DNA of 63,954 nt, the filler included, from Octopus bimaculoides (taxonomy: Eukaryota): the NCBI RefSeq assembly GCF_001194135.2. It is 7 parts of 6 records of this genome, joined end to end, with 100 filler letters (N's around TTAATTAATTAA, not from the genome) between each part and the next. Parts side by side here need not be neighbours in the genome. Positions count along the whole stretch, not along the records: positions 49,139 to 59,453 come from NC_068996.1; 6 more parts are not named here. One strand, given 5' to 3'. The notes beneath the pieces were generated by a model. The model saw nothing but the letters and a program-made list of their open reading frames with translations. It had not been told where the DNA came from and made no database searches. The position numbers were made by a program, and so were the translations under genes. This document shows, one piece after another, positions 49,139 to 59,710 of the stretch. The first letter of the stretch is position 1. Every line of letters begins with the position of its first letter.

Positions 49139-49191
<53 letters not shown>

Positions 49192-49623
49192 ATACATACG
49201 TACGCATATGTGAGTTGTGTGTATGTGTGCTGTGTGTGCATGTGTGTGTATGCATGTGTGTATGTATGTTTTTCCTAAAACACTAACGATATAAATTGCA
49301 AAGTGTTTCTTTGTTTTTGTTTTTGTTTACCACAATTGCATCGGTTCAGTGCCGATCTGGCGCAAATCAATAAGAGCAAAAGACACAAAGTCTAAAATTG
49401 TATTACCTGTTTCTTGTTTGATTAAAATTAATGGGAATTTAAGAGGTAGAACGTATTGTAAATTTTTAAAATCTGTTTACATGACAGTCCATGGTCGTCC
49501 ATCAATGTTACTGAACTGTCAAGTGCAACGAAGTAGTACAGTAGCTGAACATGTAGACGAAATGTTTCGAATCTTGGTATCGAGTGTCAGCCATTTAAGT
49601 TAACGACAGTGGATGCAGAATAG

Positions 49624-49651
<28 letters not shown>

Positions 49652-49657
<6 letters not shown>

Positions 49658-49842
49658 AATCCCTAAAAAGAACAAATGCAAAAAACAACAACGCAAGGAC
49701 GTTGTACATGTAATGTATTAGCAGACGCCCAGGAATGGAAAGAAAGATAGTTTAATGTTTCGAGCAGACGCGCTTCTTCGGAAACAGAGGAAAGTCCAGT
49801 AGAAGGGGAGACGGTGGAAGAAAATTGCCAACGATTCACATG
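49652..49842 (-). mobile_element. Short HHR-bearing element at (TA)n, running into a gap
   Basis: HHR at 49750-49785; terminus TAGTAAATC. Confidence 0.6.
49750..49785 (-). ncRNA. Minimal type I hammerhead motif (U4 and helix III mutated)
   Basis: GUUU-CCGAAGA-A-GCGC-GUCU-GCUC-GAA-ACAU-U/AAAC. Confidence 0.58.
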
Positions 49843-50786
49843 NNNNNNNNNNNNNNNNNNNNNNNNNNNNNNNNNNNNNNNNNNNNNNNNNNNNNNNNNN
49901 NNNNNNNNNNNNNNNNNNNNNNNNNNNNNNNNNNNNNNNNNNNNNNNNNNNNNNNNNNNNNNNNNNNNNNNNNNNNNNNNNNNNNNNNNNNNNNNNNNNN
50001 NNNNNNNNNNNNNNNNNNNNNNNNNNNNNNNNNNNNNNNNNNNNNNNNNNNNNNNNNNNNNNNNNNNNNNNNNNNNNNNNNNNNNNNNNNNNNNNNNNNN
50101 NNNNNNNNNNNNNNNNNNNNNNNNNNNNNNNNNNNNNNNNNNNNNNNNNNNNNNNNNNNNNNNNNNNNNNNNNNNNNNNNNNNNNNNNNNNNNNNNNNNN
50201 NNNNNNNNNNNNNNNNNNNNNNNNNNNNNNNNNNNNNNNNNNNNNNNNNNNNNNNNNNNNNNNNNNNNNNNNNNNNNNNNNNNNNNNNNNNNNNNNNNNN
50301 NNNNNNNNNNNNNNNNNNNNNNNNNNNNNNNNNNNNNNNNNNNNNNNNNNNNNNNNNNNNNNNNNNNNNNNNNNNNNNNNNNNNNNNNNNNNNNNNNNNT
50401 ATATATATATACATATAATCGAATGTGCACTGAAATGTCCTGGCTTGTGGTAAAAGAAAATACAGGAGGATCAATTTATTATGATTTCATTCTCCTCTCT
50501 GATTCACACACTTATTGCAGTGGTCCTTCAGTTTTTCTAAGCCCTGTAAAAGAACTCGGAATGTTGGGCTTCCAACCTGGCCTTTTACAATACCCTTAAA
50601 ACCAGGAACTTTTCAATATTCCCTCTTAAATCTTGCTGGAAATCAATATATTTTCTTTTGTCATTTTTGAGAGGATAAAATAGATATCGACGTTGTATTA
50701 GAATAAATTTAATGAAGAGTATTCCCTTCTGTGTAAATGTATGTTTTTTGCTTTCAAATAAGAAATCATTTTTATTGGAGTATTGA

Positions 50787-51005
50787 AGGCGGCGAGCTGG
50801 CAGAATCGTTAGCACGCCGGAAAAAATGCTTAGCGGTATTTCGTTCATCTTTATATTCTGAGTTCAAATTCGACCGAAGCTGACTTTATCTTTCAACCTT
50901 TCGGTATCGAAAAAATAAGTATCACTTGAGCACTGAGACTGGATACAATAGACCTAACCCCTTCCCCCGAATTTCTGGCCATATATCAAAATTTGAAATC
51001 AATAT
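50787..51005 (+). mobile_element. SINE family B, full length
   Basis: AGGCGGCGAGCTGGCAGAATCGTTAGCACGCCGG..GAGTTCAAATTC. Confidence 0.88.
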
Positions 51006-52537
51006 TATAAGAGCATTTAGATAATCAAACAGGAACTAAAGATAATATCGGATTATTCGAATCGAACTAGAATATTTCTCCTTCATTTAGGAAGTTAGCT
51101 ACTCTTGAGAAATCCTCCACAATATTTGATCTCATCTCTTAAAAATATGCACTTATTATAAAGAAATCAGTTTGGAGCCTTTAGTTTTCATAAGTAAAGG
51201 CCTTGAAGTTTGAATAAAATATTTTAAATTCAAAACATTTCTGAAGTCGGAGATCTATTTTAAATTCAAAATAGATCTCTGACTTCAGAAATGTATCCCG
51301 GCCTTTAAAACACTGTACGTGACAATATACTTTGTTTTTTCTGTCACCCAAAAAATCAATTAACAAATAAAACATTGCCGCAAGACTGAGGACTCAGTAT
51401 AGCAGATACCACTTTTTCCAGCCTAAACTCAGATGGAAATTTGAAGTTAACACGGCGATTTAACGAGTAGCTTTTGAATTTTGTTGCACCGGTACATCTT
51501 CCCGAATATAATGAATTGAACACAATTTCTTATTCCAGAGTACAGTTAAGATTTCAACAACACAGGACGTTCATTCGTCTCAGTATCCGCCGTGACCGTC
51601 GTTCTTCTTCCCACGTCATAAATCAAAATTGTCATCAACTTAAGACTGTCAATATTACCTTATGCTTGTAAATACTACCTTATATCTGTCAAATTTATAA
51701 TGCTTTCTGGGATTAGAACTACCGTGTATTTGCATGTGTCGACTTTATCAGAATTCCGATAAGGCTATAAGCGTGTATGTCAGAATAGATATTTCAGAAT
51801 AGATTTATCAGTTAAAAAATAATTGTATGCCAAGTTACATTAAAGGCAATACCAGCTGATCATCGTTATATATATATATATATATATATATNNNNNNNNN
51901 NNNNNNNNNNNNNNNNNNNNNNNNNNNNNNNNNNNNNNNNNNNNNNNNNNNNNNNNNNNNNNNNNNNNNNNNNNNNNNNNNNNNNNNNNNNNNNNNNNNN
52001 NNNNNNNNNNNNNNNNNNNNNNNNNNNNNNNNNNNNNNNNNNNNNNNNNNNNNNNNNNNNNNNNNNNNNNNNNNNNNNNNNNNNNNNNNNNNNNNNNNNN
52101 NNNNNNNNNNNNNNNNNNNNNNNNNNNNNNNNNNNNNNNNNNNNNNNNNNNNNNNNNNNNNNNNNNNNNNNNNNNNNNNNNNNNNNNNNNNNNNNNNNNN
52201 NNNNNNNNNNNNNNNNNNNNNNNNNNNNNNNNNNNNNNNNNNNNNNNNNNNNNNNNNNNNNNNNNNNNNNNNNNNNNNNNNNNNNNNNNNNNNNNNNNNN
52301 NNNNNNNNNNNNNNNNNNNNNNNNNNNNNNNNNNNNNNNNNNNNNNNNNNNNNNNNNNNNNNNNNNNNNNNNNNNNNNNNNNNNNNNNNNNNNNNNNNNN
52401 NNNNNNNNNNNNNNNNNNNNNNNNNNNNNNNNNNNTTTATATTTGAATGTACGTATAAAAACGTATATACATATACTATAAATATATACACATATATATT
52501 TATGTATGTATGTAAATATATATATATATAGACATGT

Positions 52538-52636
<99 letters not shown>

Positions 52637-52920
52637 ACTATATCTGTTCATAAATTGTATGCATGAGTTTTGTTTTGCCATCAGTTAAATTAGGTTCAAA
52701 TTGCTGATAATTGCACGTGACATATAAAACCGAAATAATGTTTCTTCTTCGTGGTTAAATTACCGGTTTATAGCGTTTAACAAGAAATGTTTGTCAAGTG
52801 TTTTGAAGGTTTTATCATGTTATTGAATTGAATTTAGTGAAGGAAACGAAACGAATCAATTAATCATCAACTGACTTGAAATTCTTCTCAAGTGAAATAG
52901 AAAAATAGCAAAATTTAAGA

Positions 52921-53280
52921 TGCAAGTATGGATGTGTGATTAAGGAATTCATTTTATAACCACGTGATTTGAGGCTCAGTCTCACTTGTGCTGCAATTTG
53001 GTTAAGTGTGTTCTACTATTGCTCCGGGCCAACCAATGCCTTTGAATAAATTTGATCGACACAAACAGTGAGTAACCCCTTCGGAATTATCCTTATGTGT
53101 GTGTGTCCCCTTTTTGTGTTTGTCCCCTTTTTTGTGTTTGTCCCCTTTGTTGTGTTTGTCTCCTTCCTACTACTTTAAGAGTGCTGTTGGCATGTTTACG
53201 ACCGTAACTTAGCGAATCAACAAATGAAACAATAAAATAAGTACCAGACTTAAGAAATGATTACTGGTGTAGGTTTGTCA
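52921..53280 (+). mobile_element. SINE family A, diverged, with internal 17-18 bp tandem repeat
   Basis: GTGTGTTCTACTATTGCTCCGGGCCAACCAATGCCTT..; (TGTCCCCTTTTTGTGTT)-like units. Confidence 0.7.
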
Positions 53281-54057
53281 AAGTGAAAAAAGTTGCCACG
53301 TTGTAAGATCCAACTTGAATCTTTGTGATATGTATAGCAAACATCATAATCACTTAGTCAATTCCTTCTTGCTCATTTGAATGTCTTCTGTAAAATATAT
53401 GGGATTAGAAATTCTATTCCGAAAAGTATGTGCAGTAGTATTGTACTCAGTTTTGCTTGAGCTATTTTTGTCTCAGAAAACAAAAAAATCCTGTTTCTAA
53501 TTTGGAGAGGGAGGACCAAAACCAGAATTCGTTCCCAAATCGTATCAATTCCTAGAATACTAATTGAGTGATATTTTATATAATATATAAATCGCAAGGA
53601 ATATTTGCCAGAAAAAAATTGGTTCACTTTCGACAGTTCTATAATGTTTGATTGTCGGCCAAGTTATATATTTAAACTGATGAAAAATTTCTATAGGTGT
53701 AAATCTTGTGATTATGTTCCGAAAAGGTCATGTTTTATGTATAATATAAAATTAGCATCGTATGTATACACACAGGAACTTCTACCCGCTGCTTGGATCA
53801 ACAGCTATTTTTCTATGATATTATTCATGAGGTAAAATGAAATGTAATCGGTTTAATTAATTTTTTTTTATATATATATTAAGTATATTTGTGAGATCAT
53901 ATTTAAAAGAAATATTCTTCTGATGTTAGAGAAAATTTGTTATACTCAATAATCTCTTTTATTCAATATTCTTACACAAACAACTATATAACTCTTTTCA
54001 CTACCAAAATTTGTTAATGATACGTAAGAAAAACATAGTGAGATCGACGAAACTTAA

Positions 54058-54330
54058 TGATCATCATCATCATAACCTGTTTAGATTCATGGGGAAAGTA
54101 GGTTTTCCATAACAGTTTTTAACACGTTTTATCTTGTATCGTTTACTGTGGGTTTATGTCACCTTAGTTTCTCTTTAATTTCTTTTCTGCCTCAGAAGGT
54201 TTGGTTACCCAACCTTCCTGTTCTTCTGAAGGTATTGTCCGAAAGATTGCCCTACACAATATCCCTCCGGACTTCATGAATTCCATACAAGTAGTAAACA
54301 AACGTTTTTCTTGTAGGTAGTAAGAAAATA
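54058..54330 (-). mobile_element. Probable RTE LINE relic
   Basis: EFMKSGGILCRAIFRTIPSEEQEGWVTK resembles the RTE K.GG..LF..IP.EW.EG motif; (ATC)n tail at 54058. Confidence 0.45.
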
Positions 54331-55356
54331 TCAGCGATGGTGGGTATCCAGAAGTTTGCGATGCAAAGGGTAATGGCTTAAAGCCAAATGTATGGTATAG
54401 ATTATTGAAGTTAAAACATATCAGATCGGGCTGGAGGATGAGGGACAGGTAAATCAAAATGAATTCGGTGAGGATTGTTACTCAAATCGTTAGATTTCAC
54501 ACCAATAAGGATGGTTGTAAGAGAGACATAAATGAAGAGAAGCACAATATTCAATGAGCAAGGGCCTCTTCTTCCCCTTCTTTGTTTTTCATCCTTTCGG
54601 GGTCAATAAATTAATTACCAGTCGATGTAATTAACTTTTCCCCCTCCCCCCAAATTGCTGGCATTGTGCCTATAATAGAAAAGATCATTATTATTTGTTA
54701 TACCTGTTGTTATTATTTGGTGTATGCGTTATGTATGTAGAAAATGCTCCATTATCAGCATGCAGTCATAAATCCAGTATAAGGCTATTTGTAGTGTCAA
54801 TAGTTGCTCTATAGCTTGTTGATGTTTGATCCTCAATTTAAGACCTAGCTTTAGAAACGTAATTTTATCAAATTATGAGACCTAAAATTTCAAAGAGATT
54901 TAGTTGTTGATTGTTCATGAGGTGTGAAGATGTAGACTGGGTTTTGTTTTTGTTTTCTTAAATATTGCTATGAGAGTCGATAGTGATTTTCCCTTGTTAA
55001 TGTGCATATGGTATGTCAAAAACAAAAAAATTGAAGTGAAGTGCTAAGAAATTTTCATATATTTTGTACATTGGAAGCGAGAGTAAGAAGATCATAGTTG
55101 GTCAGTAAGAAGACGCGGAGACGATCAACGCTAATGATGACTGCTTTGTTAGAACTAACAATAATTGCAGAGTTCAGAATAGAAGTGTAATGTATTCCCT
55201 TTCAAGACTTTAGACAACGTGACGTAGACAGACTGACACAATTAATGATCACAAGAAATATAAGCCTTTATTTGTTTGTCTATTTATTTGTTTACTTATC
55301 TATTCATCTGTCTTGTCTGTCTCTCTGCCTGTCTGTTTAACTATCTGTCTGTTTAA

Positions 55357-55492
<136 letters not shown>

Positions 55493-55670
55493 ATATATAT
55501 ATNNNNNNNNNNNNNNNNNNNNNNNNNNNNNNNNNNNNNNNNNNNNNNNNNNNNNNNNNNNNNNNNNNNNNNNNNNNNNNNNNNNNNNNNNNNNNNNNNN
55601 NNNNNNNNNNNNNNNNNNNNNNNNNNNNNNNNNNNNNNNNNNNNNNNNNNNNNNNNNNNNNNNNNNNNNN

Positions 55671-55704
<34 letters not shown>

Positions 55705-55747
55705 CTACACACCTATGTATGTGCTTGTTCGTGTTTGTGTGTGTATT

Positions 55748-55779
<32 letters not shown>

Positions 55780-56552
55780 AGTGTGTGTATCGTAATATGG
55801 ACATTGAATTTTCGCTTCGGCTTGCTTTGAAACGGATAAATAGTTATACATAATTGTAAACACACACACACACACACACGCACGCACACACACATACACA
55901 CAAGCACACACACACATTAATTTAGAATTAAGGAGAATAAGGAAAGTGGTTTGTGGAGTGGACAGGATTAAAGTAAAATAATAATTGAAGAAAACATAGA
56001 AACAAACACTAACGGGAAGAAACTTATATTAAACTATATTTATGACGGCAAGTTAAAAGCGATGGCTCAGCTACGTTGGACTGAAGAAGTTTAATTTATA
56101 TGATGGAAGATAAAAAGCTATATTTATATTTAAAGATTGGAATTATAGTGTTAGATTTATTATGACAGAGATATAGCCGGTGTTGCTATAATGATTAATT
56201 AATATTCTGTTCAAACCGTATATCAGTCCATATTTTATATAATTATTGGATCAGCGATACATTATATTAATTAAGGCTTTTAAAATTTATTATCTGTATT
56301 TTTGAGGATAATATAAATACAAATGATCATCATTATGTATATTACTGTGATATATTATTTACTAATATAAAGGAGGAACAATGACTTGTAATGTTTAATA
56401 TATAATAAATTTCTTTAAATACTTATTGCAAATCGTGTATGAATAATAACATAAGTGTCATATTACATGCACCATTGAAAGTATACAATAGCTATTGCAA
56501 CAGTTTTTAGGAATTCAAATGAGTATTAAATAAAGCATGGCTATGAACGCAT

Positions 56553-56730
56553 GCGTGGCTGTCAGGTAAAAAGTTTGCTGCGCGGCAGCTTGAGCAAGTG
56601 TCTTATACTATAGCTACGGGTCAACGGAAACCTTGGGAATAGATTTATTAAACGGAAACTGAAAGAAGCACGTCGTATATATAAATGTGCGGGCGTGTGT
56701 GTGTGTGTTTGTCCCCCACCATCGCTTCAC
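56553..56730 (+). mobile_element. SINE family A, partial
   Basis: GCGTGGCTGT..GCAAGTGTCTT..ACGGAAACTGAAAGAAGC..CCCCACCATCGCTT. Confidence 0.75.
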
Positions 56731-57039
56731 ATATAAAAACAGCTAACATAAAAGCGAGATAAACAAAGAATTATTTCAGATAAATAATAACGTTACTTTT
56801 GTTTTTATTTAGTATGAAACAAACTGCAAATGAGATTAAGACAATTTTTCGTGAATAAATTATTATATGAAAAAGGTTTTGTTGTGTAGGTCTTGGAATA
56901 TTTCCGATTTAATGCTCGGTATGTTTTGAAAAAATGTATACGCTCCAGCATGACCACAGCCGCATGTCTGAAACGAATAAAAGAATATACATCCAAAACG
57001 CCACCTTGTGGTGTCTTGGCTACATGTACAATTTTTTGA

Positions 57040-57290
57040 GTCTCGGCCATCTTCTTCAGCCACTATTCGTGGGAGGTCCGTGTGTGTAAAGTCTTCTGGC
57101 ACTCCTCCTTAGAGCCCTATCAATGTCATTTGACCTTCCGGCCGGTTTCAATTGAGACTATGATTATTATTCAACCACCTCTTTCTTGGTCTCCACCTAG
57201 ATCTCCTATCATTGGGCTCGACTTGAAGAATTCCTCTTGCGATTCTTTCCAGTGACGTTCTAATACTGGAGCTGTAACTTCTCAACGTAA
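57040..57290 (-). mobile_element. RTE LINE 3' end relic
   Basis: RIARGILQVEPNDRRSRWRPRKRWLNN resembles the RTE terminal R.RGRP.KRW motif. Confidence 0.5.
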
Positions 57291-57334
57291 TGTATTGTTA
57301 GTGTACAAAAATAGCAGATATAAATTTCACGCAT

Positions 57335-57530
57335 TTGCACAAGGCTAGCAATTTCCAGGGAGGTGTGGTGTAGGTCGATTACGCGAAGCTACTGTTCAAC
57401 TTGTACTTATTTTATCGATCCCCGGAAGGTAAAGTTGATCTCAGTAGAATTTGAACTGAGAATGCGAGGATGGACGGAATGCCGCTAAGTATTATTCACG
57501 GAGTCCTAAGGATTCTGCCACCTCGCCGAC
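57335..57530 (-). mobile_element. SINE family B
   Basis: TACTTATTTTATCGATCCC..AAAGTTGATCTC..TTTGAACT..GATTCTGCCACCTCGCC. Confidence 0.8.
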
Positions 57531-58306
57531 TGATATAAGTTTCACAGACAAAATAATGATTTCGAAGTAAGTGTAAAATCCCCAAATAATTTTTATTGCA
57601 CTAAAATTAATCGAGTTATTGTTTTAAATATCTGGCGGTAATTAGTTAACAATAAAATCGTTTAGCGTTATATACTCAAAAACAGGAAGAGATTTTATAA
57701 AAAAAATTATGAGATCACATTGAAACAAATAGTGAGAATTGTGTTTTAGAGTTTCCATTCAGTAAATATTTTAAATAGCACGAAGGTAAATATAAAATGT
57801 TTAAAATATTAAACAATAAAAATATAAATTTCTTATTAATATTACATGAAATATATATGTGGGGATTCTAAATATAATTTACAACAAACTATATGATAGT
57901 CGTAACAAAATATATAATAAAACATAACAACACTTACAATTTATGTGTGGATATGTATGTATGAGTACGTACATGCACATATATGTTTGTGTGTGTATGT
58001 GCAGACGTAATGAACGCAGGAGGTTTTATGTCTATGTATCGTGAGAATATAGTTGCGTGTATTTTTTACGTTTTATATTTTTCTACCAATTAGAGTAACT
58101 TCCCTTTTATTCAACGTTCTTTTTCATAGCGCCTATTGCCATTAATAGCCGACGTGAATGTATCGTAGCTCTTAACTCCGGCATTTGAAACTCCGAGTAC
58201 TATTATGACAACTTACTGATTATCCTAAATTATACATACTAATGAGCCTCTGCCTAATATCGAGGTCTCATTCTTTCCTTGTCATTTTTTAATTGTATAT
58301 ATATGT

Positions 58307-58510
58307 TCTTTTATTTGTTTCAGTCATTTGACTATGGCCATGCTGGAGTACAGCCTTTAGTCGAGCAAATTGACCCCAGGACTTATTCCTTGTAAACCTA
58401 ATACTTATTCTATTGGTCTCTTTTGCCGAACCGCTAATTTACGGGGATGTAAACACACCAGCATCGGTTGTCAAGCGATGGAGGGAGACAAATAGAGACA
58501 CACGCACACA

Positions 58511-58553
<43 letters not shown>

Positions 58554-58722
58554 TTATAGGGTGGGAATCTTTCAGTTTCTGTCTACCAAATTCAATCACA
58601 AAGCTCGGATCGGCCCGAGGCTGTATAGAAGACACTTGCCCAAAGTGCCATACAACGGGACTGAACCCTGAACCATGTGGCTGGTAAGCAAGCTAGTTAC
58701 CACACAGCTACTCCTGCGCCTA
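58307..58722 (-). mobile_element. SINE family A, full length
   Basis: Reverse complement of 193-600 architecture including head CTCCTGCGCCTAT and internal (CA)n. Confidence 0.88.
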
Positions 58723-58732
58723 TACATGTATA

Positions 58733-59313
58733 TATATTTTTATATATAACGTTGACCACTAACGTGGACATTTAATGTGCTAGAAATAGATCACATCTTG
58801 TGTCTACTAAGACCTACATTGTTTAGCTTCCTGGTAATAAATCGATATTAATTAATATATGATTTTTAACCCTATGTTTTAATCTGATTAACCATAACCA
58901 AGTTCTCAAACTGGATATATGCGACGCAGTAAATATTTTCTGCAGACATATTCCCGGAATTAGAGAGCCAAAACGAAGACTTTTGAATTTTACCATTAAG
59001 CTGTAATTAACAGAACCACATACATGTTCACCTATGACGGTGGGCAACTTTGTATAGGGTTCTGAGAGTTATGGTTACATTACAGATCAGGCTGAAGAGA
59101 AACAGACGTTCGGTAAGAGTGTTAATTTCGAAACTAGTTCCTGTTTTAATAATGATTTTTTTCGGTAATTTTAAATGTCTTACCCGCCTACGCTTTGGTA
59201 TTCCGCTGAATTTCGTTTTGAGAACAATTTAGGTCTTAGTAGACACAAGATGTGATCTATTTCTAGCACATTAAATGTCCACGTTAGTGGTCAACGTTAT
59301 ATATAAAAATATA
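58733..59313 (+). mobile_element. 581-bp non-coding element with 91-bp terminal inverted repeats and an internal hammerhead
   Basis: 58733-58823 is the reverse complement of 59223-59313 with one mismatch; TA-rich ends; no credible ORF. Confidence 0.8.
59088..59143 (+). ncRNA. Minimal type I hammerhead ribozyme, all core residues intact
   Basis: CAGG-CUGAAGA-GAAA[23 nt]UUUC-GAA-ACUAGU-U/CCUG: helix I CAGG:CCUG, helix II GAAA:UUUC with G10.1-C11.1, palindromic helix III. Confidence 0.78.
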
Positions 59314-59710
59314 CTTTAATCCCCTGAGATCGCAGATATTGTTTCTGAATCTCTTTTATTCTTTAAATGTGCTAGCTTCCTGGTAATAAATCGATATTAA
59401 TTAATATATGATTTTAACCCTATGTTTTAATCTGATTAACCATGTATATATATNNNNNNNNNNNNNNNNNNNNNNNNNNNNNNNNNNNNNNNNNNNNTTA
59501 ATTAATTAANNNNNNNNNNNNNNNNNNNNNNNNNNNNNNNNNNNNNNNNNNNNGTTTTCCTATGTGTTCGTTCCGTTGTCTGTAGTTCATTGTTCTAACG
59601 TCCTGTACCCTGATATGCATCTATATACACATGTAGATGTATGTACATATATGTGTATACATGCATATATATTCTTTGTATTATATATATATATATTCAT
59701 TCTATTACAC

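What the first reader, a model, noticed from the sequence alone, without database searches (positions are those of the whole stretch)
58733..59313. Non-coding inverted-end element carrying an intact hammerhead ribozyme
Seen: 91-bp terminal inverted repeats with one mismatch (young), TA-rich ends, no credible ORF, and at 59088-59143 a complete core (C3 U4 G5 A6 A7 G8 A9, G10.1-C11.1, G12 A13 A14, A15.1-U16.1) with helix I CAGG:CCUG and palindromic helix III ACUAGU; predicted cleavage after GUU at 59139. Established: minimal type I HHRs with palindromic helix III occur in PLE pseudo-LTRs and animal retrozymes and typically work as dimers. Inference: this MITE look-alike may be a ribozyme-bearing non-autonomous retroelement mobilised by a PLE RT, with the inverted ends made by inverted reverse transcription rather than being transposase TIRs.
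Basis: partly seen in the sequence, partly recalled or inferred. Interest (0 to 1): 0.85.

Follow-up and report, generated by a model that had tools for sequence, protein, structure and literature searches.

The report
Hammerhead-bearing retrozyme-like repeat with inverted ends
A short non-coding repeat in an invertebrate-type genome scaffold carries a complete hammerhead self-cleaving RNA motif, and its layout looks like the footprint of a Penelope-type reverse transcriptase rather than a cut-and-paste transposon; this is a probable new member of a known kind of element, not a new kind.

Summary
The 91-nt inverted repeat (58733-58823 / 59223-59313) has one mismatch. No ORF is credible. At 59088-59143 (+) every hammerhead box is present: CUGAAGA, G10.1-C11.1, GAAAC, palindromic helix III ACUAGU and GUU, with cleavage at 59139/59140. 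A standard descriptor expects about 1e-5 to 4e-4 such motifs per 59.5-kb window by chance.

Covariance models do not confirm it. Rfam gives no hammerhead hit at E<=10. A model built from four published retrozyme ribozymes ranks it first at only 9.6 bits (E 0.36).

- The 72 nt just inside the left arm recur in direct orientation at 59373-59443 (98.6%).
- CATGTATATATAT occurs only twice in the piece, at the two outer borders.

A partial head-to-tail repeat, an inverted truncated copy on the 5' side, a TA-microsatellite target and an AT-rich self-paired body with a type I hammerhead match published Penelope-like/retrozyme insertion architecture better than a MITE.

No other copy could be retrieved, so conservation, mobility and cleavage are untested. 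Verdict: probable new member of a known kind, moderate-to-low interest.

The parts
58725..58737 (+). Left copy of CATGTATATATAT. Candidate target-site duplication in a TA microsatellite; it overlaps the first 5 nt of the inverted repeat.
   Evidence: The word occurs only twice in the 10.3-kb piece, at 58725 and 59441.
58733..58823 (+). Left arm A: inverted copy of 59223-59313 (91 nt, 1 mismatch at 58817). Read here as an inverted, 5'-truncated copy of the element's 3'-terminal segment.
58824..58895 (+). Segment B: first copy of the 72-nt direct repeat. It begins exactly at the inner end of the left arm.
   Evidence: 98.6% to 59373-59443, one T indel.
58896..59222 (+). Unique AT-rich non-coding body C (GC 37%), more self-paired than shuffles.
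   Evidence: MFE -88.8 against -67.7 +/- 4.9 kcal/mol for shuffles, z -4.3. No Rfam hit. No Pfam hit or homologue for its ORFs.
58999..59076 (+). 78-nt imperfect hairpin immediately 5' of the ribozyme motif.
   Evidence: Helices 58999-59008/59067-76, 59011-17/59058-64, 59020-24/59051-55 and 59025-32/59039-46; -34.1 kcal/mol.
59088..59143 (+). Type I hammerhead consensus. Helix I 59088-91/59140-43; core CUGAAGA 59092-98; helix II 59099-59129; GAA 59130-32; palindromic helix III ACUAGU 59133-38; U17 59139. Predicted cleavage is between 59139 and 59140.
   Evidence: Read directly. Only descriptor hit in the piece. Chance expectation 1e-5 to 4e-4 per window. Same box pattern (CUGANGA/GAAAY/RUH) and AC..GU palindrome as four validated retrozyme ribozymes. 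Covariance-model support is not significant.
59223..59313 (+). Right arm A', ending ...GGTCAACGTTATATATAAAAATATA. Candidate 3'-terminal segment of the unit, with a TA-rich tail.
   Evidence: A similar word TGATCATCGTTATATATA(TA)n lies at 51857-51891 (family D7).
59314..59361 (+). Unique 48-nt segment D between the right arm and the second partial copy. It is either the unit's 5' start or a PLE-type 'tail'.
   Evidence: No significant similarity to arms, body or flank.
59362..59375 (+). a*: TTTAAATGTGCTAG, near-identical to 58770-58783 in the left arm. It abuts the second B copy and shares TAG with it.
   Evidence: (family D6). Its relation to the arms is unexplained (note).
59373..59443 (+). 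B2: second, direct copy of segment B (spacing 548-549 nt), which implies a unit of about 549 nt.
59441..59453 (+). Right copy of CATGTATATATAT, cut off by the end of the piece.

Best explanation
The 581-bp inverted-end unit is the larger part of one composite insertion, about 58738-59443 (roughly 706 bp), sitting in a TA microsatellite. I read it as a non-autonomous, retrozyme-like retroelement copied into the genome by a Penelope-like (PLE) reverse transcriptase/endonuclease acting in trans.

Proposed unit: about 549 nt, in the order D - a* - B - C - A'. It is AT-rich, non-coding and self-paired, and carries one sense-strand type I hammerhead in C.

Proposed history, all inferred:
1. A multimeric or circular + strand RNA was reverse-transcribed from a nick in (TA)n, starting inside B with CAT microhomology.
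2. Synthesis ran for about 1.13 units. This gave B2 at the right and B at the left as a pseudo-LTR-like direct repeat.
3. The copy was 5'-truncated at 58824.
4. An inverted, 5'-truncated 91-nt copy of the unit's 3' end (A) was added at the 5' side. Published PLE insertions typically show this. It produces a MITE-like look.

Proposed function of the ribozyme, also inferred: in transcripts containing two or more units, or in trans with another copy, two motifs pair through the palindrome ACUAGU to form a double hammerhead. Each cuts after U17 (59139). This releases unit-length RNA with 5'-OH and 2',3'-cyclic phosphate ends that can be ligated into a circle and used as an RT template. At this locus there is one motif only, so a read-through transcript would at most be cut once.

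Shown: the sequence anatomy, the statistics of the motif, and the fold excess.
Inferred: the RNA intermediate, the PLE partner, dimeric cleavage, and the order of events.
For: (1) Complete hammerhead boxes with correct topology at 59088-59143. It is the only match in the piece. Chance expectation is 1.5e-5 (palindromic helix III) to 3.8e-4 (any hairpin) per 59.5-kb window, with 0 matches in 40 Mb of random sequence.

(2) The pattern is the same as in experimentally cleaving retrozyme ribozymes from coral, mussel and axolotl: CUGANGA, 4-bp helix II, GAAAC...GU-H with a fully palindromic helix III. Axolotl Ax330 has ACATGT where this one has ACTAGT. This matches the text description in PMC4209133.

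(3) The direct repeat B/B2 (72 nt, 98.6%) starts exactly at the inner border of the left arm. It is as young as the inverted repeat (98.9%), which suggests one event.

(4) CATGTATATATAT is present only at the two outer borders of the composite. (TA)n target bias (Naiad clade; hypothesised for Neptune) and variable-length TSDs are published PLE properties, as are partial tandems plus an inverted 5'-truncated copy giving flanking inverted repeats.

(5) GC is 34-37%. The body and the circularised 549-nt unit fold better than shuffles (z -4.3 and -3.9). The MFE keeps hammerhead helices I and II. Retrozymes are described as low-GC, highly self-paired repeats.

(6) The double-hammerhead structure is energetically accessible: -25.0 against 2 x -11.7 kcal/mol for two monomers.

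(7) The hammerhead is on the same strand as the TA-rich putative 3' tail of A'.
Against: - No second copy of the element could be retrieved, so there is no evidence that it is a family, and no conservation or covariation data.
- No RT or GIY-YIG coding remnant is present in the 10-kb piece.
- Covariance models do not support the motif: Rfam gives nothing at E<=10, and my own model gives 9.6 bits, E 0.36.
- Helix II is weak (GAAA/UUUC) with a 23-nt insertion. Helix I has 4 continuous bp. H17 is U. No loop-loop contacts are recognisable. The unconstrained dimer MFE (-29.6) is not the double hammerhead.
- Only one ribozyme is present, so no circle can be made from this locus.
- The ribozyme lies outside the duplicated (pLTR-like) segment.
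- The right arm A' is not at the right end of the composite, unlike the textbook PLE picture.
- The a* word and the 40 nt between it and B on the left are not explained by the model.
- The TSD-like word is TA-microsatellite sequence next to a contig end, so a coincidence is possible.
- My descriptor thresholds were set after seeing the candidate.
Confidence: 0.5

Rival explanations
1. A class II element. Under this reading it is a MITE or foldback-type non-autonomous DNA transposon with 91-bp terminal inverted repeats, inserted at TA or TATA. The hammerhead-like motif would be a captured relic or a chance match with no role in mobility. The downstream a*-B2 piece would be filler or abortive gap-repair DNA, or a fragment of a second copy.
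For: - Long, near-perfect terminal inverted repeats; a short AT-rich non-coding body; and TA / TATA present at both outer ends of the arms (58733-36 and 59310-13), compatible with a palindromic TA-type duplication.
- The covariance models give no significant hammerhead call.
- The a* word next to B2 suggests that the arm-B junction is native sequence rather than an RT junction.
Against: - There is no non-palindromic TSD at the arm borders: the 10 nt outside are TACATGTATA and CTTTAATCCC.
- It needs a separate explanation for an equally young 72-nt direct copy 48 nt away in the same orientation. It also needs one for the border word duplicated at the composite's ends rather than at the arms' ends.
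- A full hammerhead consensus with a palindromic helix III is expected about 1e-5 times per window by chance.
- The arm termini resemble no transposase-family terminus that I can name. That last point is from memory and was not tested.
Confidence: 0.25
2. A one-off DNA-level event or an assembly artefact. Replication template-switching or fold-back repair, or short-read mis-assembly in a TA-microsatellite-rich, gap-ridden scaffold, would have created both the inverted and the direct duplication in otherwise unique or satellite DNA. The hammerhead motif would be a decayed relic or a coincidence.
For: - The piece is a draft scaffold with three N gaps (49843-50399, 51892-52435, 55503-55670). Both of its ends lie in TA repeats.
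- The two duplications have the same roughly 1% divergence, as expected from a single event.
- No other copy was found anywhere.
- PLE-type structures are themselves known to upset short-read assembly.
Against: - The arms are 399 nt apart and differ at one base, unlike typical perfect hairpin-contig artefacts.
- The region 55671-59453 is gap-free.
- The body is structured beyond chance.
- The motif statistics argue that a genuine ribozyme-derived sequence is present, whatever duplicated it.
- The collections searched hold no animal genomes, so the lack of copies carries little weight.
Confidence: 0.15

Closest known systems
Metazoan non-LTR retrozymes (Cervera & de la Pena 2020, PMC7229834; Li et al. 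2026 preprint 10.64898/2026.07.22.740005)
   Same: - Non-coding, low-GC (34%) and self-paired repeat unit.
- One sense-strand type I hammerhead with the boxes CUGANGA / GAAAY / RUH, a 4-bp helix II stem and a fully palindromic helix III, which implies dimeric action.
- Head-to-tail (partial) repetition.
- Solo 'monomer' copies are reported as common.
   Different: - Only about 1.13 units and a single ribozyme are present here.
- The unit is about 549 nt, against the usual 150-450.
- There is a 23-nt insertion in loop 2, an AU-only helix II, U at position 17, and only 4 continuous bp in helix I.
- A 91-nt inverted terminal copy is present; I did not find this described for retrozymes in the passages I read.
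- Neither Rfam nor a model built from four retrozyme ribozymes detects it.
Penelope-like elements: pLTR hammerheads and PLE insertion architecture (Cervera & de la Pena 2014, PMC4209133; Craig et al. 2021, 10.1101/2021.04.23.441226)
   Same: - Partial tandem giving a direct terminal repeat.
- An inverted 5'-truncated copy at the 5' side giving inverted repeats.
- (TA)n microsatellite target (reported for Naiads, which themselves lack hammerheads) with a long or ambiguous duplication.
- Hammerhead motif present.
- Many genomic PLE-derived hammerheads are solitary, some paired on opposite strands 100-700 bp apart.
   Different: - No RT/GIY-YIG ORF, so the element would be non-autonomous.
- The motif has a helix III and no extra nucleotide between A9 and G10.1, so it is of the canonical type rather than the PLE 'min-HHR' type.
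- The ribozyme lies outside the duplicated segment.
- The right inverted-repeat arm is internal to the composite.
MITEs / foldback elements (class II non-autonomous transposons)
   Same: About 0.6 kb, AT-rich and non-coding, with long near-perfect terminal inverted repeats and possible TA duplication. The whole unit folds into a long hairpin (z -19).
   Different: There is no unambiguous TSD at the arm borders. An adjoining direct partial copy is present. The border word is duplicated at the composite's ends rather than the arms' ends. A complete ribozyme consensus is present.
Classical satellite or SINE-like hammerhead carriers (newt satellite 2, Schistosoma Sm-alpha, cave-cricket pDo500), as cited in PMC4209133
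   Same: A type I hammerhead in a short non-coding repeat, with a weak or palindromic helix III and dimer-dependent activity.
   Different: Those form long tandem arrays or pol III SINE-like dispersed copies. Neither an array nor pol III boxes are seen here.

Membership tests
Hammerhead ribozyme, type I (metazoan canonical form) | Conserved core boxes CUGANGA / GAAAY / RUH in the right order | tested here: met
   CUGAAGA 59092-98, GAAAC 59130-34, GUU 59137-39. The box definition is from the PMC7229834 supplement.
Hammerhead ribozyme, type I (metazoan canonical form) | Three helices around the core with helix I open; G10.1-C11.1 closing helix II | tested here: met
   Helix I is 4 bp, plus 3 and 5 bp after interruptions. 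Helix II is GAAA/UUUC plus a 7-bp extension. G59099-C59129 forms the closing pair. Helix I is shorter and helix II weaker and longer than the canonical 6 and 4 bp.
Hammerhead ribozyme, type I (metazoan canonical form) | Short helix III (1-2 bp) with a small palindromic loop, able to form a double hammerhead | tested here: met
   ACUAGU is self-complementary. The modelled double hammerhead is -25.0 kcal/mol against -23.4 for two monomers, but the unconstrained dimer MFE is another fold at -29.6.
Hammerhead ribozyme, type I (metazoan canonical form) | Loop 1 / loop 2 tertiary contacts | tested here: inconclusive
   No recognisable conserved loop nucleotides. Loop 2 is replaced by a 23-nt hairpin. 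The mussel retrozyme ribozymes also lack most of these contacts.
Hammerhead ribozyme, type I (metazoan canonical form) | Score above threshold with a curated covariance model (Rfam hammerhead families) | tested here: not met
   No hammerhead family is listed at E<=10 on 10.3 kb or on 754 nt. My own model R1 gives a top hit of only 9.6 bits, E 0.36.
Hammerhead ribozyme, type I (metazoan canonical form) | Conservation and covariation across family copies; self-cleavage | not testable with these tools
   No other copy is retrievable. Cleavage needs an experiment.
Non-LTR retrozyme | Head-to-tail tandem repeats (dimers or more), each unit with a hammerhead | tested here: inconclusive
   Only a 72-nt second copy is present at a spacing of 548-549 nt, about 1.13 units, with one ribozyme. 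The sequence after 59443 is TA repeat and then the end of the piece. Solo monomers are accepted derivatives.
Non-LTR retrozyme | Low GC (<45-50%), non-coding, highly self-paired unit | tested here: met
   GC is 0.34. The circular 549-nt unit has z -3.9 and the body z -4.3. No coding signal was found.
Non-LTR retrozyme | Expression as linear and circular RNA; co-occurrence with PLEs in the genome | not testable with these tools
   No transcriptome or whole genome is available, and the species is not identified.
PLE-type insertion (non-autonomous derivative) | Partial tandem (pseudo-LTR) plus an inverted 5'-truncated copy at the 5' end | tested here: met
   Direct repeat B/B2 and inverted repeat A/A', with B starting exactly where A ends. 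Caveat: A' is not the extreme 3' end of the composite.
PLE-type insertion (non-autonomous derivative) | Microsatellite ((TA)n) target, reported for the Naiad clade, with a variable-length TSD | tested here: inconclusive
   CATGTATATATAT occurs only at 58725 and 59441. This is suggestive, but it is low-complexity sequence and the right copy is cut by the end of the piece.
PLE-type insertion (non-autonomous derivative) | Hammerhead located in the repeated pLTR; sequence similarity to the pLTR of an autonomous PLE | tested here: not met
   The motif (59088-59143) lies outside the duplicated 72 nt. Similarity to a PLE pLTR could not be tested.
MITE (class II) | Terminal inverted repeats | tested here: met
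   91 nt, 99%.
MITE (class II) | Fixed-length target-site duplication directly flanking the TIRs | tested here: inconclusive
   Only palindromic TA/TATA inside the arms' ends could serve. The flanks beyond the arms differ.
MITE (class II) | Many copies with the same ends; termini shared with an autonomous DNA transposon | not testable with these tools
   No animal genome collection is available. There is no other copy in the piece.

The most novel reading that the evidence does not exclude
Retrozyme-like RNAs mobilised by PLE enzymes may regularly be deposited as hairpin-ended copies that standard pipelines annotate as MITEs. If so, a fraction of 'MITEs' in invertebrate genomes would be ribozyme-bearing retroelements. 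Their inverted ends would be made by reverse-transcriptase template switching and would be a distinct, recurrent 'inverted-end retrozyme' form rather than an accident of this one locus.
Probability: 0.12. Interest if true: 0.6.

Novelty: new member of a known kind. Interest (0 to 1): 0.35.

Why it matters
If the reading is right, the locus is one more hammerhead-bearing, PLE-dependent non-autonomous retroelement. Such elements are already documented from cnidarians to amphibians.

Its practical value is as a warning for annotation. An element with 91-bp near-perfect inverted ends and TA-rich termini would be filed as a MITE by structure-based tools. The partial tandem, the microsatellite target and the ribozyme instead point to reverse transcription.

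It would also add a ribozyme variant with an extended, AU-rich helix II that current covariance models miss. That bears on how many genomic hammerheads go uncounted. None of this opens a long-standing question.

Tried and rejected
- Rfam at E<=10 on the whole piece and on 754 nt gave no hammerhead. The listed microRNA hits sit on (TG)n/(TA)n and are low-complexity artefacts.
- I tried to find other copies in several ways, all without result:
  - exact-product look-ups of five ORFs;
  - DNA pattern scans of metagenome contigs with the ribozyme and arm patterns;
  - scans of GTDB genome contigs and viral contigs.
  These collections hold essentially no animal genomes, so the negatives say little.
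- Species identification failed. ARAGORN found no tRNA in the SINE and a full-text search for SINE k-mers found nothing. My impression that the flanking SINE is of the octopus/cephalopod type rests on memory only.
- Pfam on nine ORFs found nothing.
- A covariance model from four published retrozyme ribozymes ranked the candidate first, but not significantly.
- I tested whether segment D is a diverged copy of the arm and rejected it (shuffle p about 0.4).
- I looked for a second or antisense hammerhead with a relaxed descriptor, including the U3-A8 variant and a bulged base, and found none.
- I considered a 9-11-bp Mutator-like or 8-bp hAT-like TSD at the arm borders. The flanks do not match.
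- I considered tandem continuation beyond B2. Similarity stops at 59443 and the piece ends at 59453.

Full report
**Setting**

The piece (49139-59453) is a 10.3-kb draft scaffold with three N gaps (49843-50399, 51892-52435, 55503-55670). Both ends lie in TA repeats. GC is about 33%, with abundant (TA)n, (CA)n and (TCTA)n microsatellites. It has no ORF with a Pfam domain. This is non-coding animal-type DNA.

Directly upstream of the finding, 58560-58722 on the minus strand, lies a SINE-like repeat with a (TG)n tail. A diverged second copy is at about 56584-56690. From memory it resembles the abundant octopus-type SINE. I could not verify this.

**Checking the observation**

The inverted repeat is exactly as described: 58733-58823 against 59223-59313, 91 nt, one mismatch at 58817/59229.

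The longest ORFs inside are 74 and 60 aa. Both start with TTG and have no domains or homologues.

The hammerhead motif is literally present at the stated coordinates:
- CAGG (helix I 5' strand)
- CUGAAGA (core)
- G...C (helix II, 31 nt)
- GAA
- ACUAGU (helix III)
- U, then the cleavage site
- CCUG (helix I 3' strand)

Helix II is GAAA/UUUC, a 2x2 internal loop, then a 7-bp stem with three G-U pairs. In the fold of the whole body, helix I continues as 59084-86/59145-47 and 59078-82/59150-54. The motif sits at a three-way junction.

**Is the motif more than chance?**

A standard descriptor required:
- CUGANGA;
- G10.1-C11.1 plus at least 3 further pairs in helix II;
- GAAA;
- a helix III;
- a non-G at position 17;
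- at least 4 bp in helix I.

It finds only this site in the piece. A much looser version also finds only this site. Forty megabases of first-order Markov sequence gave no match.

| Helix III allowed | Expectation per position | Per 59.5-kb window (both strands) | Per 2.5-Gb genome |
|---|---|---|---|
| Palindromic | 1.2e-10 | 1.5e-5 | 0.6 |
| Any hairpin | 3.2e-9 | 3.8e-4 | 16 |

All values are from the factorised calculation.

Two caveats apply. The thresholds were fixed after seeing the candidate. I also do not know how many windows the first stage read.

Covariance models do not confirm the motif. Rfam lists no hammerhead family even at E<=10 on 754 nt. A model I built from the four experimentally cleaving retrozyme ribozymes printed in the supplement of PMC7229834 ranks the candidate first, but at 9.6 bits, E 0.36. 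The alignment printed shows a 27-nt stretch where the model expects 9 (the loop 2 insertion) and few matched letters in helix I; these are the likely cost.

The local fold is not unusually stable (z -0.21). The hammerhead-compatible monomer (-10.2) is close to the MFE (-11.7). The double hammerhead (-25.0) is accessible but is not the dimer MFE (-29.6).

Qualitatively the motif matches the published form closely. All four validated ribozymes share CUGANGA, a 4-bp helix II, and GAAAC...GU-H with a fully palindromic helix III. One of them (axolotl Ax330) has the 6-nt palindrome ACATGT where this one has ACTAGT.

The 72 nt immediately inside the left arm (58824-58895) recur in direct orientation at 59373-59443. 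Identity is 98.6%, with one T indel, at a spacing of 548-549 nt.

Just before the second copy lies TTTAAATGTGCTAG (59362-75). It is near-identical to a word inside the left arm (58770-83).

The word CATGTATATATAT occurs only twice in the piece. One copy is at 58725, overlapping the first 5 nt of the left arm. The other is at 59441, starting in the last 3 nt of the second 72-nt copy and running to the end of the piece.

So the inverted-end unit is part of a composite of roughly 58738-59443. In order, it consists of:
1. an inverted 91-nt copy of A';
2. B;
3. the body C, with the ribozyme;
4. A';
5. a unique 48 nt (D, no significant similarity to anything nearby);
6. a*;
7. B again.

It is bracketed by the same TA-microsatellite word. 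The inverted and the direct duplication are equally young, about 1% diverged.

The body alone, without the arms, folds better than dinucleotide shuffles (z -4.3). So does a circularised 549-nt unit (z -3.9). A 78-nt hairpin (58999-59076) lies just 5' of the ribozyme.

**Interpretation**

Published descriptions of PLE insertions match this composite. Copies are heavily 5'-truncated and often form partial tandems, which creates pseudo-LTRs. Often an inverted 5'-truncated copy sits at the 5' end, which creates inverted repeats around the insertion. Some carry a 30-40-bp 'tail'. A bias for (TA)n microsatellites, reported for Naiads and hypothesised for Neptune, obscures the target-site duplication (Craig et al.).

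Canonical PLEs carry hammerheads (PMC4209133). Animal retrozymes are AT-rich, self-paired, non-coding repeats with a type I hammerhead, and are now argued to be non-autonomous PLE derivatives with frequent solo monomers.

I therefore rate a PLE-mobilised, retrozyme-like non-autonomous retroelement as the best explanation (0.5). In this reading the inverted ends are a by-product of reverse transcription.

The steps from RNA to insertion, the dimeric cleavage and the PLE partner are inferred. Only the anatomy and the statistics are shown.

The model does not cover these points:
- the ribozyme is outside the duplicated segment;
- A' is internal to the composite;
- the a* word and the extra 40 nt on the left are unexplained;
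- with one ribozyme, this locus cannot itself yield circles.

**Rivals**

A MITE or foldback DNA transposon (0.25) explains the arms and possible TA duplication. It needs extra coincidences for the neighbouring direct copy, the border word and the ribozyme consensus.

A single DNA-level rearrangement or an assembly artefact (0.15) is compatible with the equal age of both duplications and with the draft quality. It does not explain the motif statistics or the structured body.

**Limits**

None of the accessible collections holds animal genomes. Every attempt to retrieve another copy failed.

**Verdict**

If real, it is a new member of a known kind (hammerhead-bearing retrozyme/PLE derivative). 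Interest is moderate to low.

Noticed in passing
window 58560-58722 (- strand), with (CA)n at 58500-58555; second diverged copy about 56584-56690 (+ strand): SINE-like repeat with a B-box-like GGTTCAGGGTTCAGTCC, ending in ...GAAACTGAAAGA... followed by a TA/TG microsatellite. The two copies are 71% identical over 83 nt. From memory it resembles the abundant octopus-type SINE, which would place the scaffold in a cephalopod. ARAGORN, a protein search and a paper k-mer search gave nothing.
   Followed up: partly
window 51838-51891 and 49592-49655, compared with 59267-59313: The right arm's end, TGGTCAACGTTATATATA, resembles TGATCATCGTTATATATA(TA)n at 51857. That site precedes a TA microsatellite and an assembly gap. 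A weaker similar word is at 49615 (families D7 and D9). This may be a shared retroelement-type 3' end ahead of (TA)n, or a coincidence driven by the TA run.
   Followed up: partly
window 50787-50892 and 57426-57531: A 106-nt pair, 76% complementary, in inverted orientation 6.5 kb apart. This is another dispersed repeat family in the scaffold, unrelated to the finding (I20).
   Followed up: no
window 55736-55914, 49141-49263, 51195-51318, 52434-52654, 57928-58020: Rfam microRNA-family matches (mir-466, MIR2646, mir-297, mir-4679 and others) all lie below gathering scores. Most sit on (TG)n/(TA)n microsatellites or simple hairpins, so they are low-complexity artefacts and not genes.
   Followed up: yes
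window 49843-50399, 51892-52435, 55503-55670: Three assembly gaps (runs of N), each bordered by TA or TCTA microsatellite. Both ends of the piece also lie in TA repeats. This indicates a short-read draft assembly that breaks at microsatellites, so complex repeats here deserve long-read confirmation.
   Followed up: yes
window 58999-59076: A 78-nt imperfect hairpin (-34 kcal/mol) lies immediately upstream of the hammerhead motif. It contributes to the excess structure of the element body. Its role is unknown; it may be part of a rod-like retrozyme fold.
   Followed up: partly
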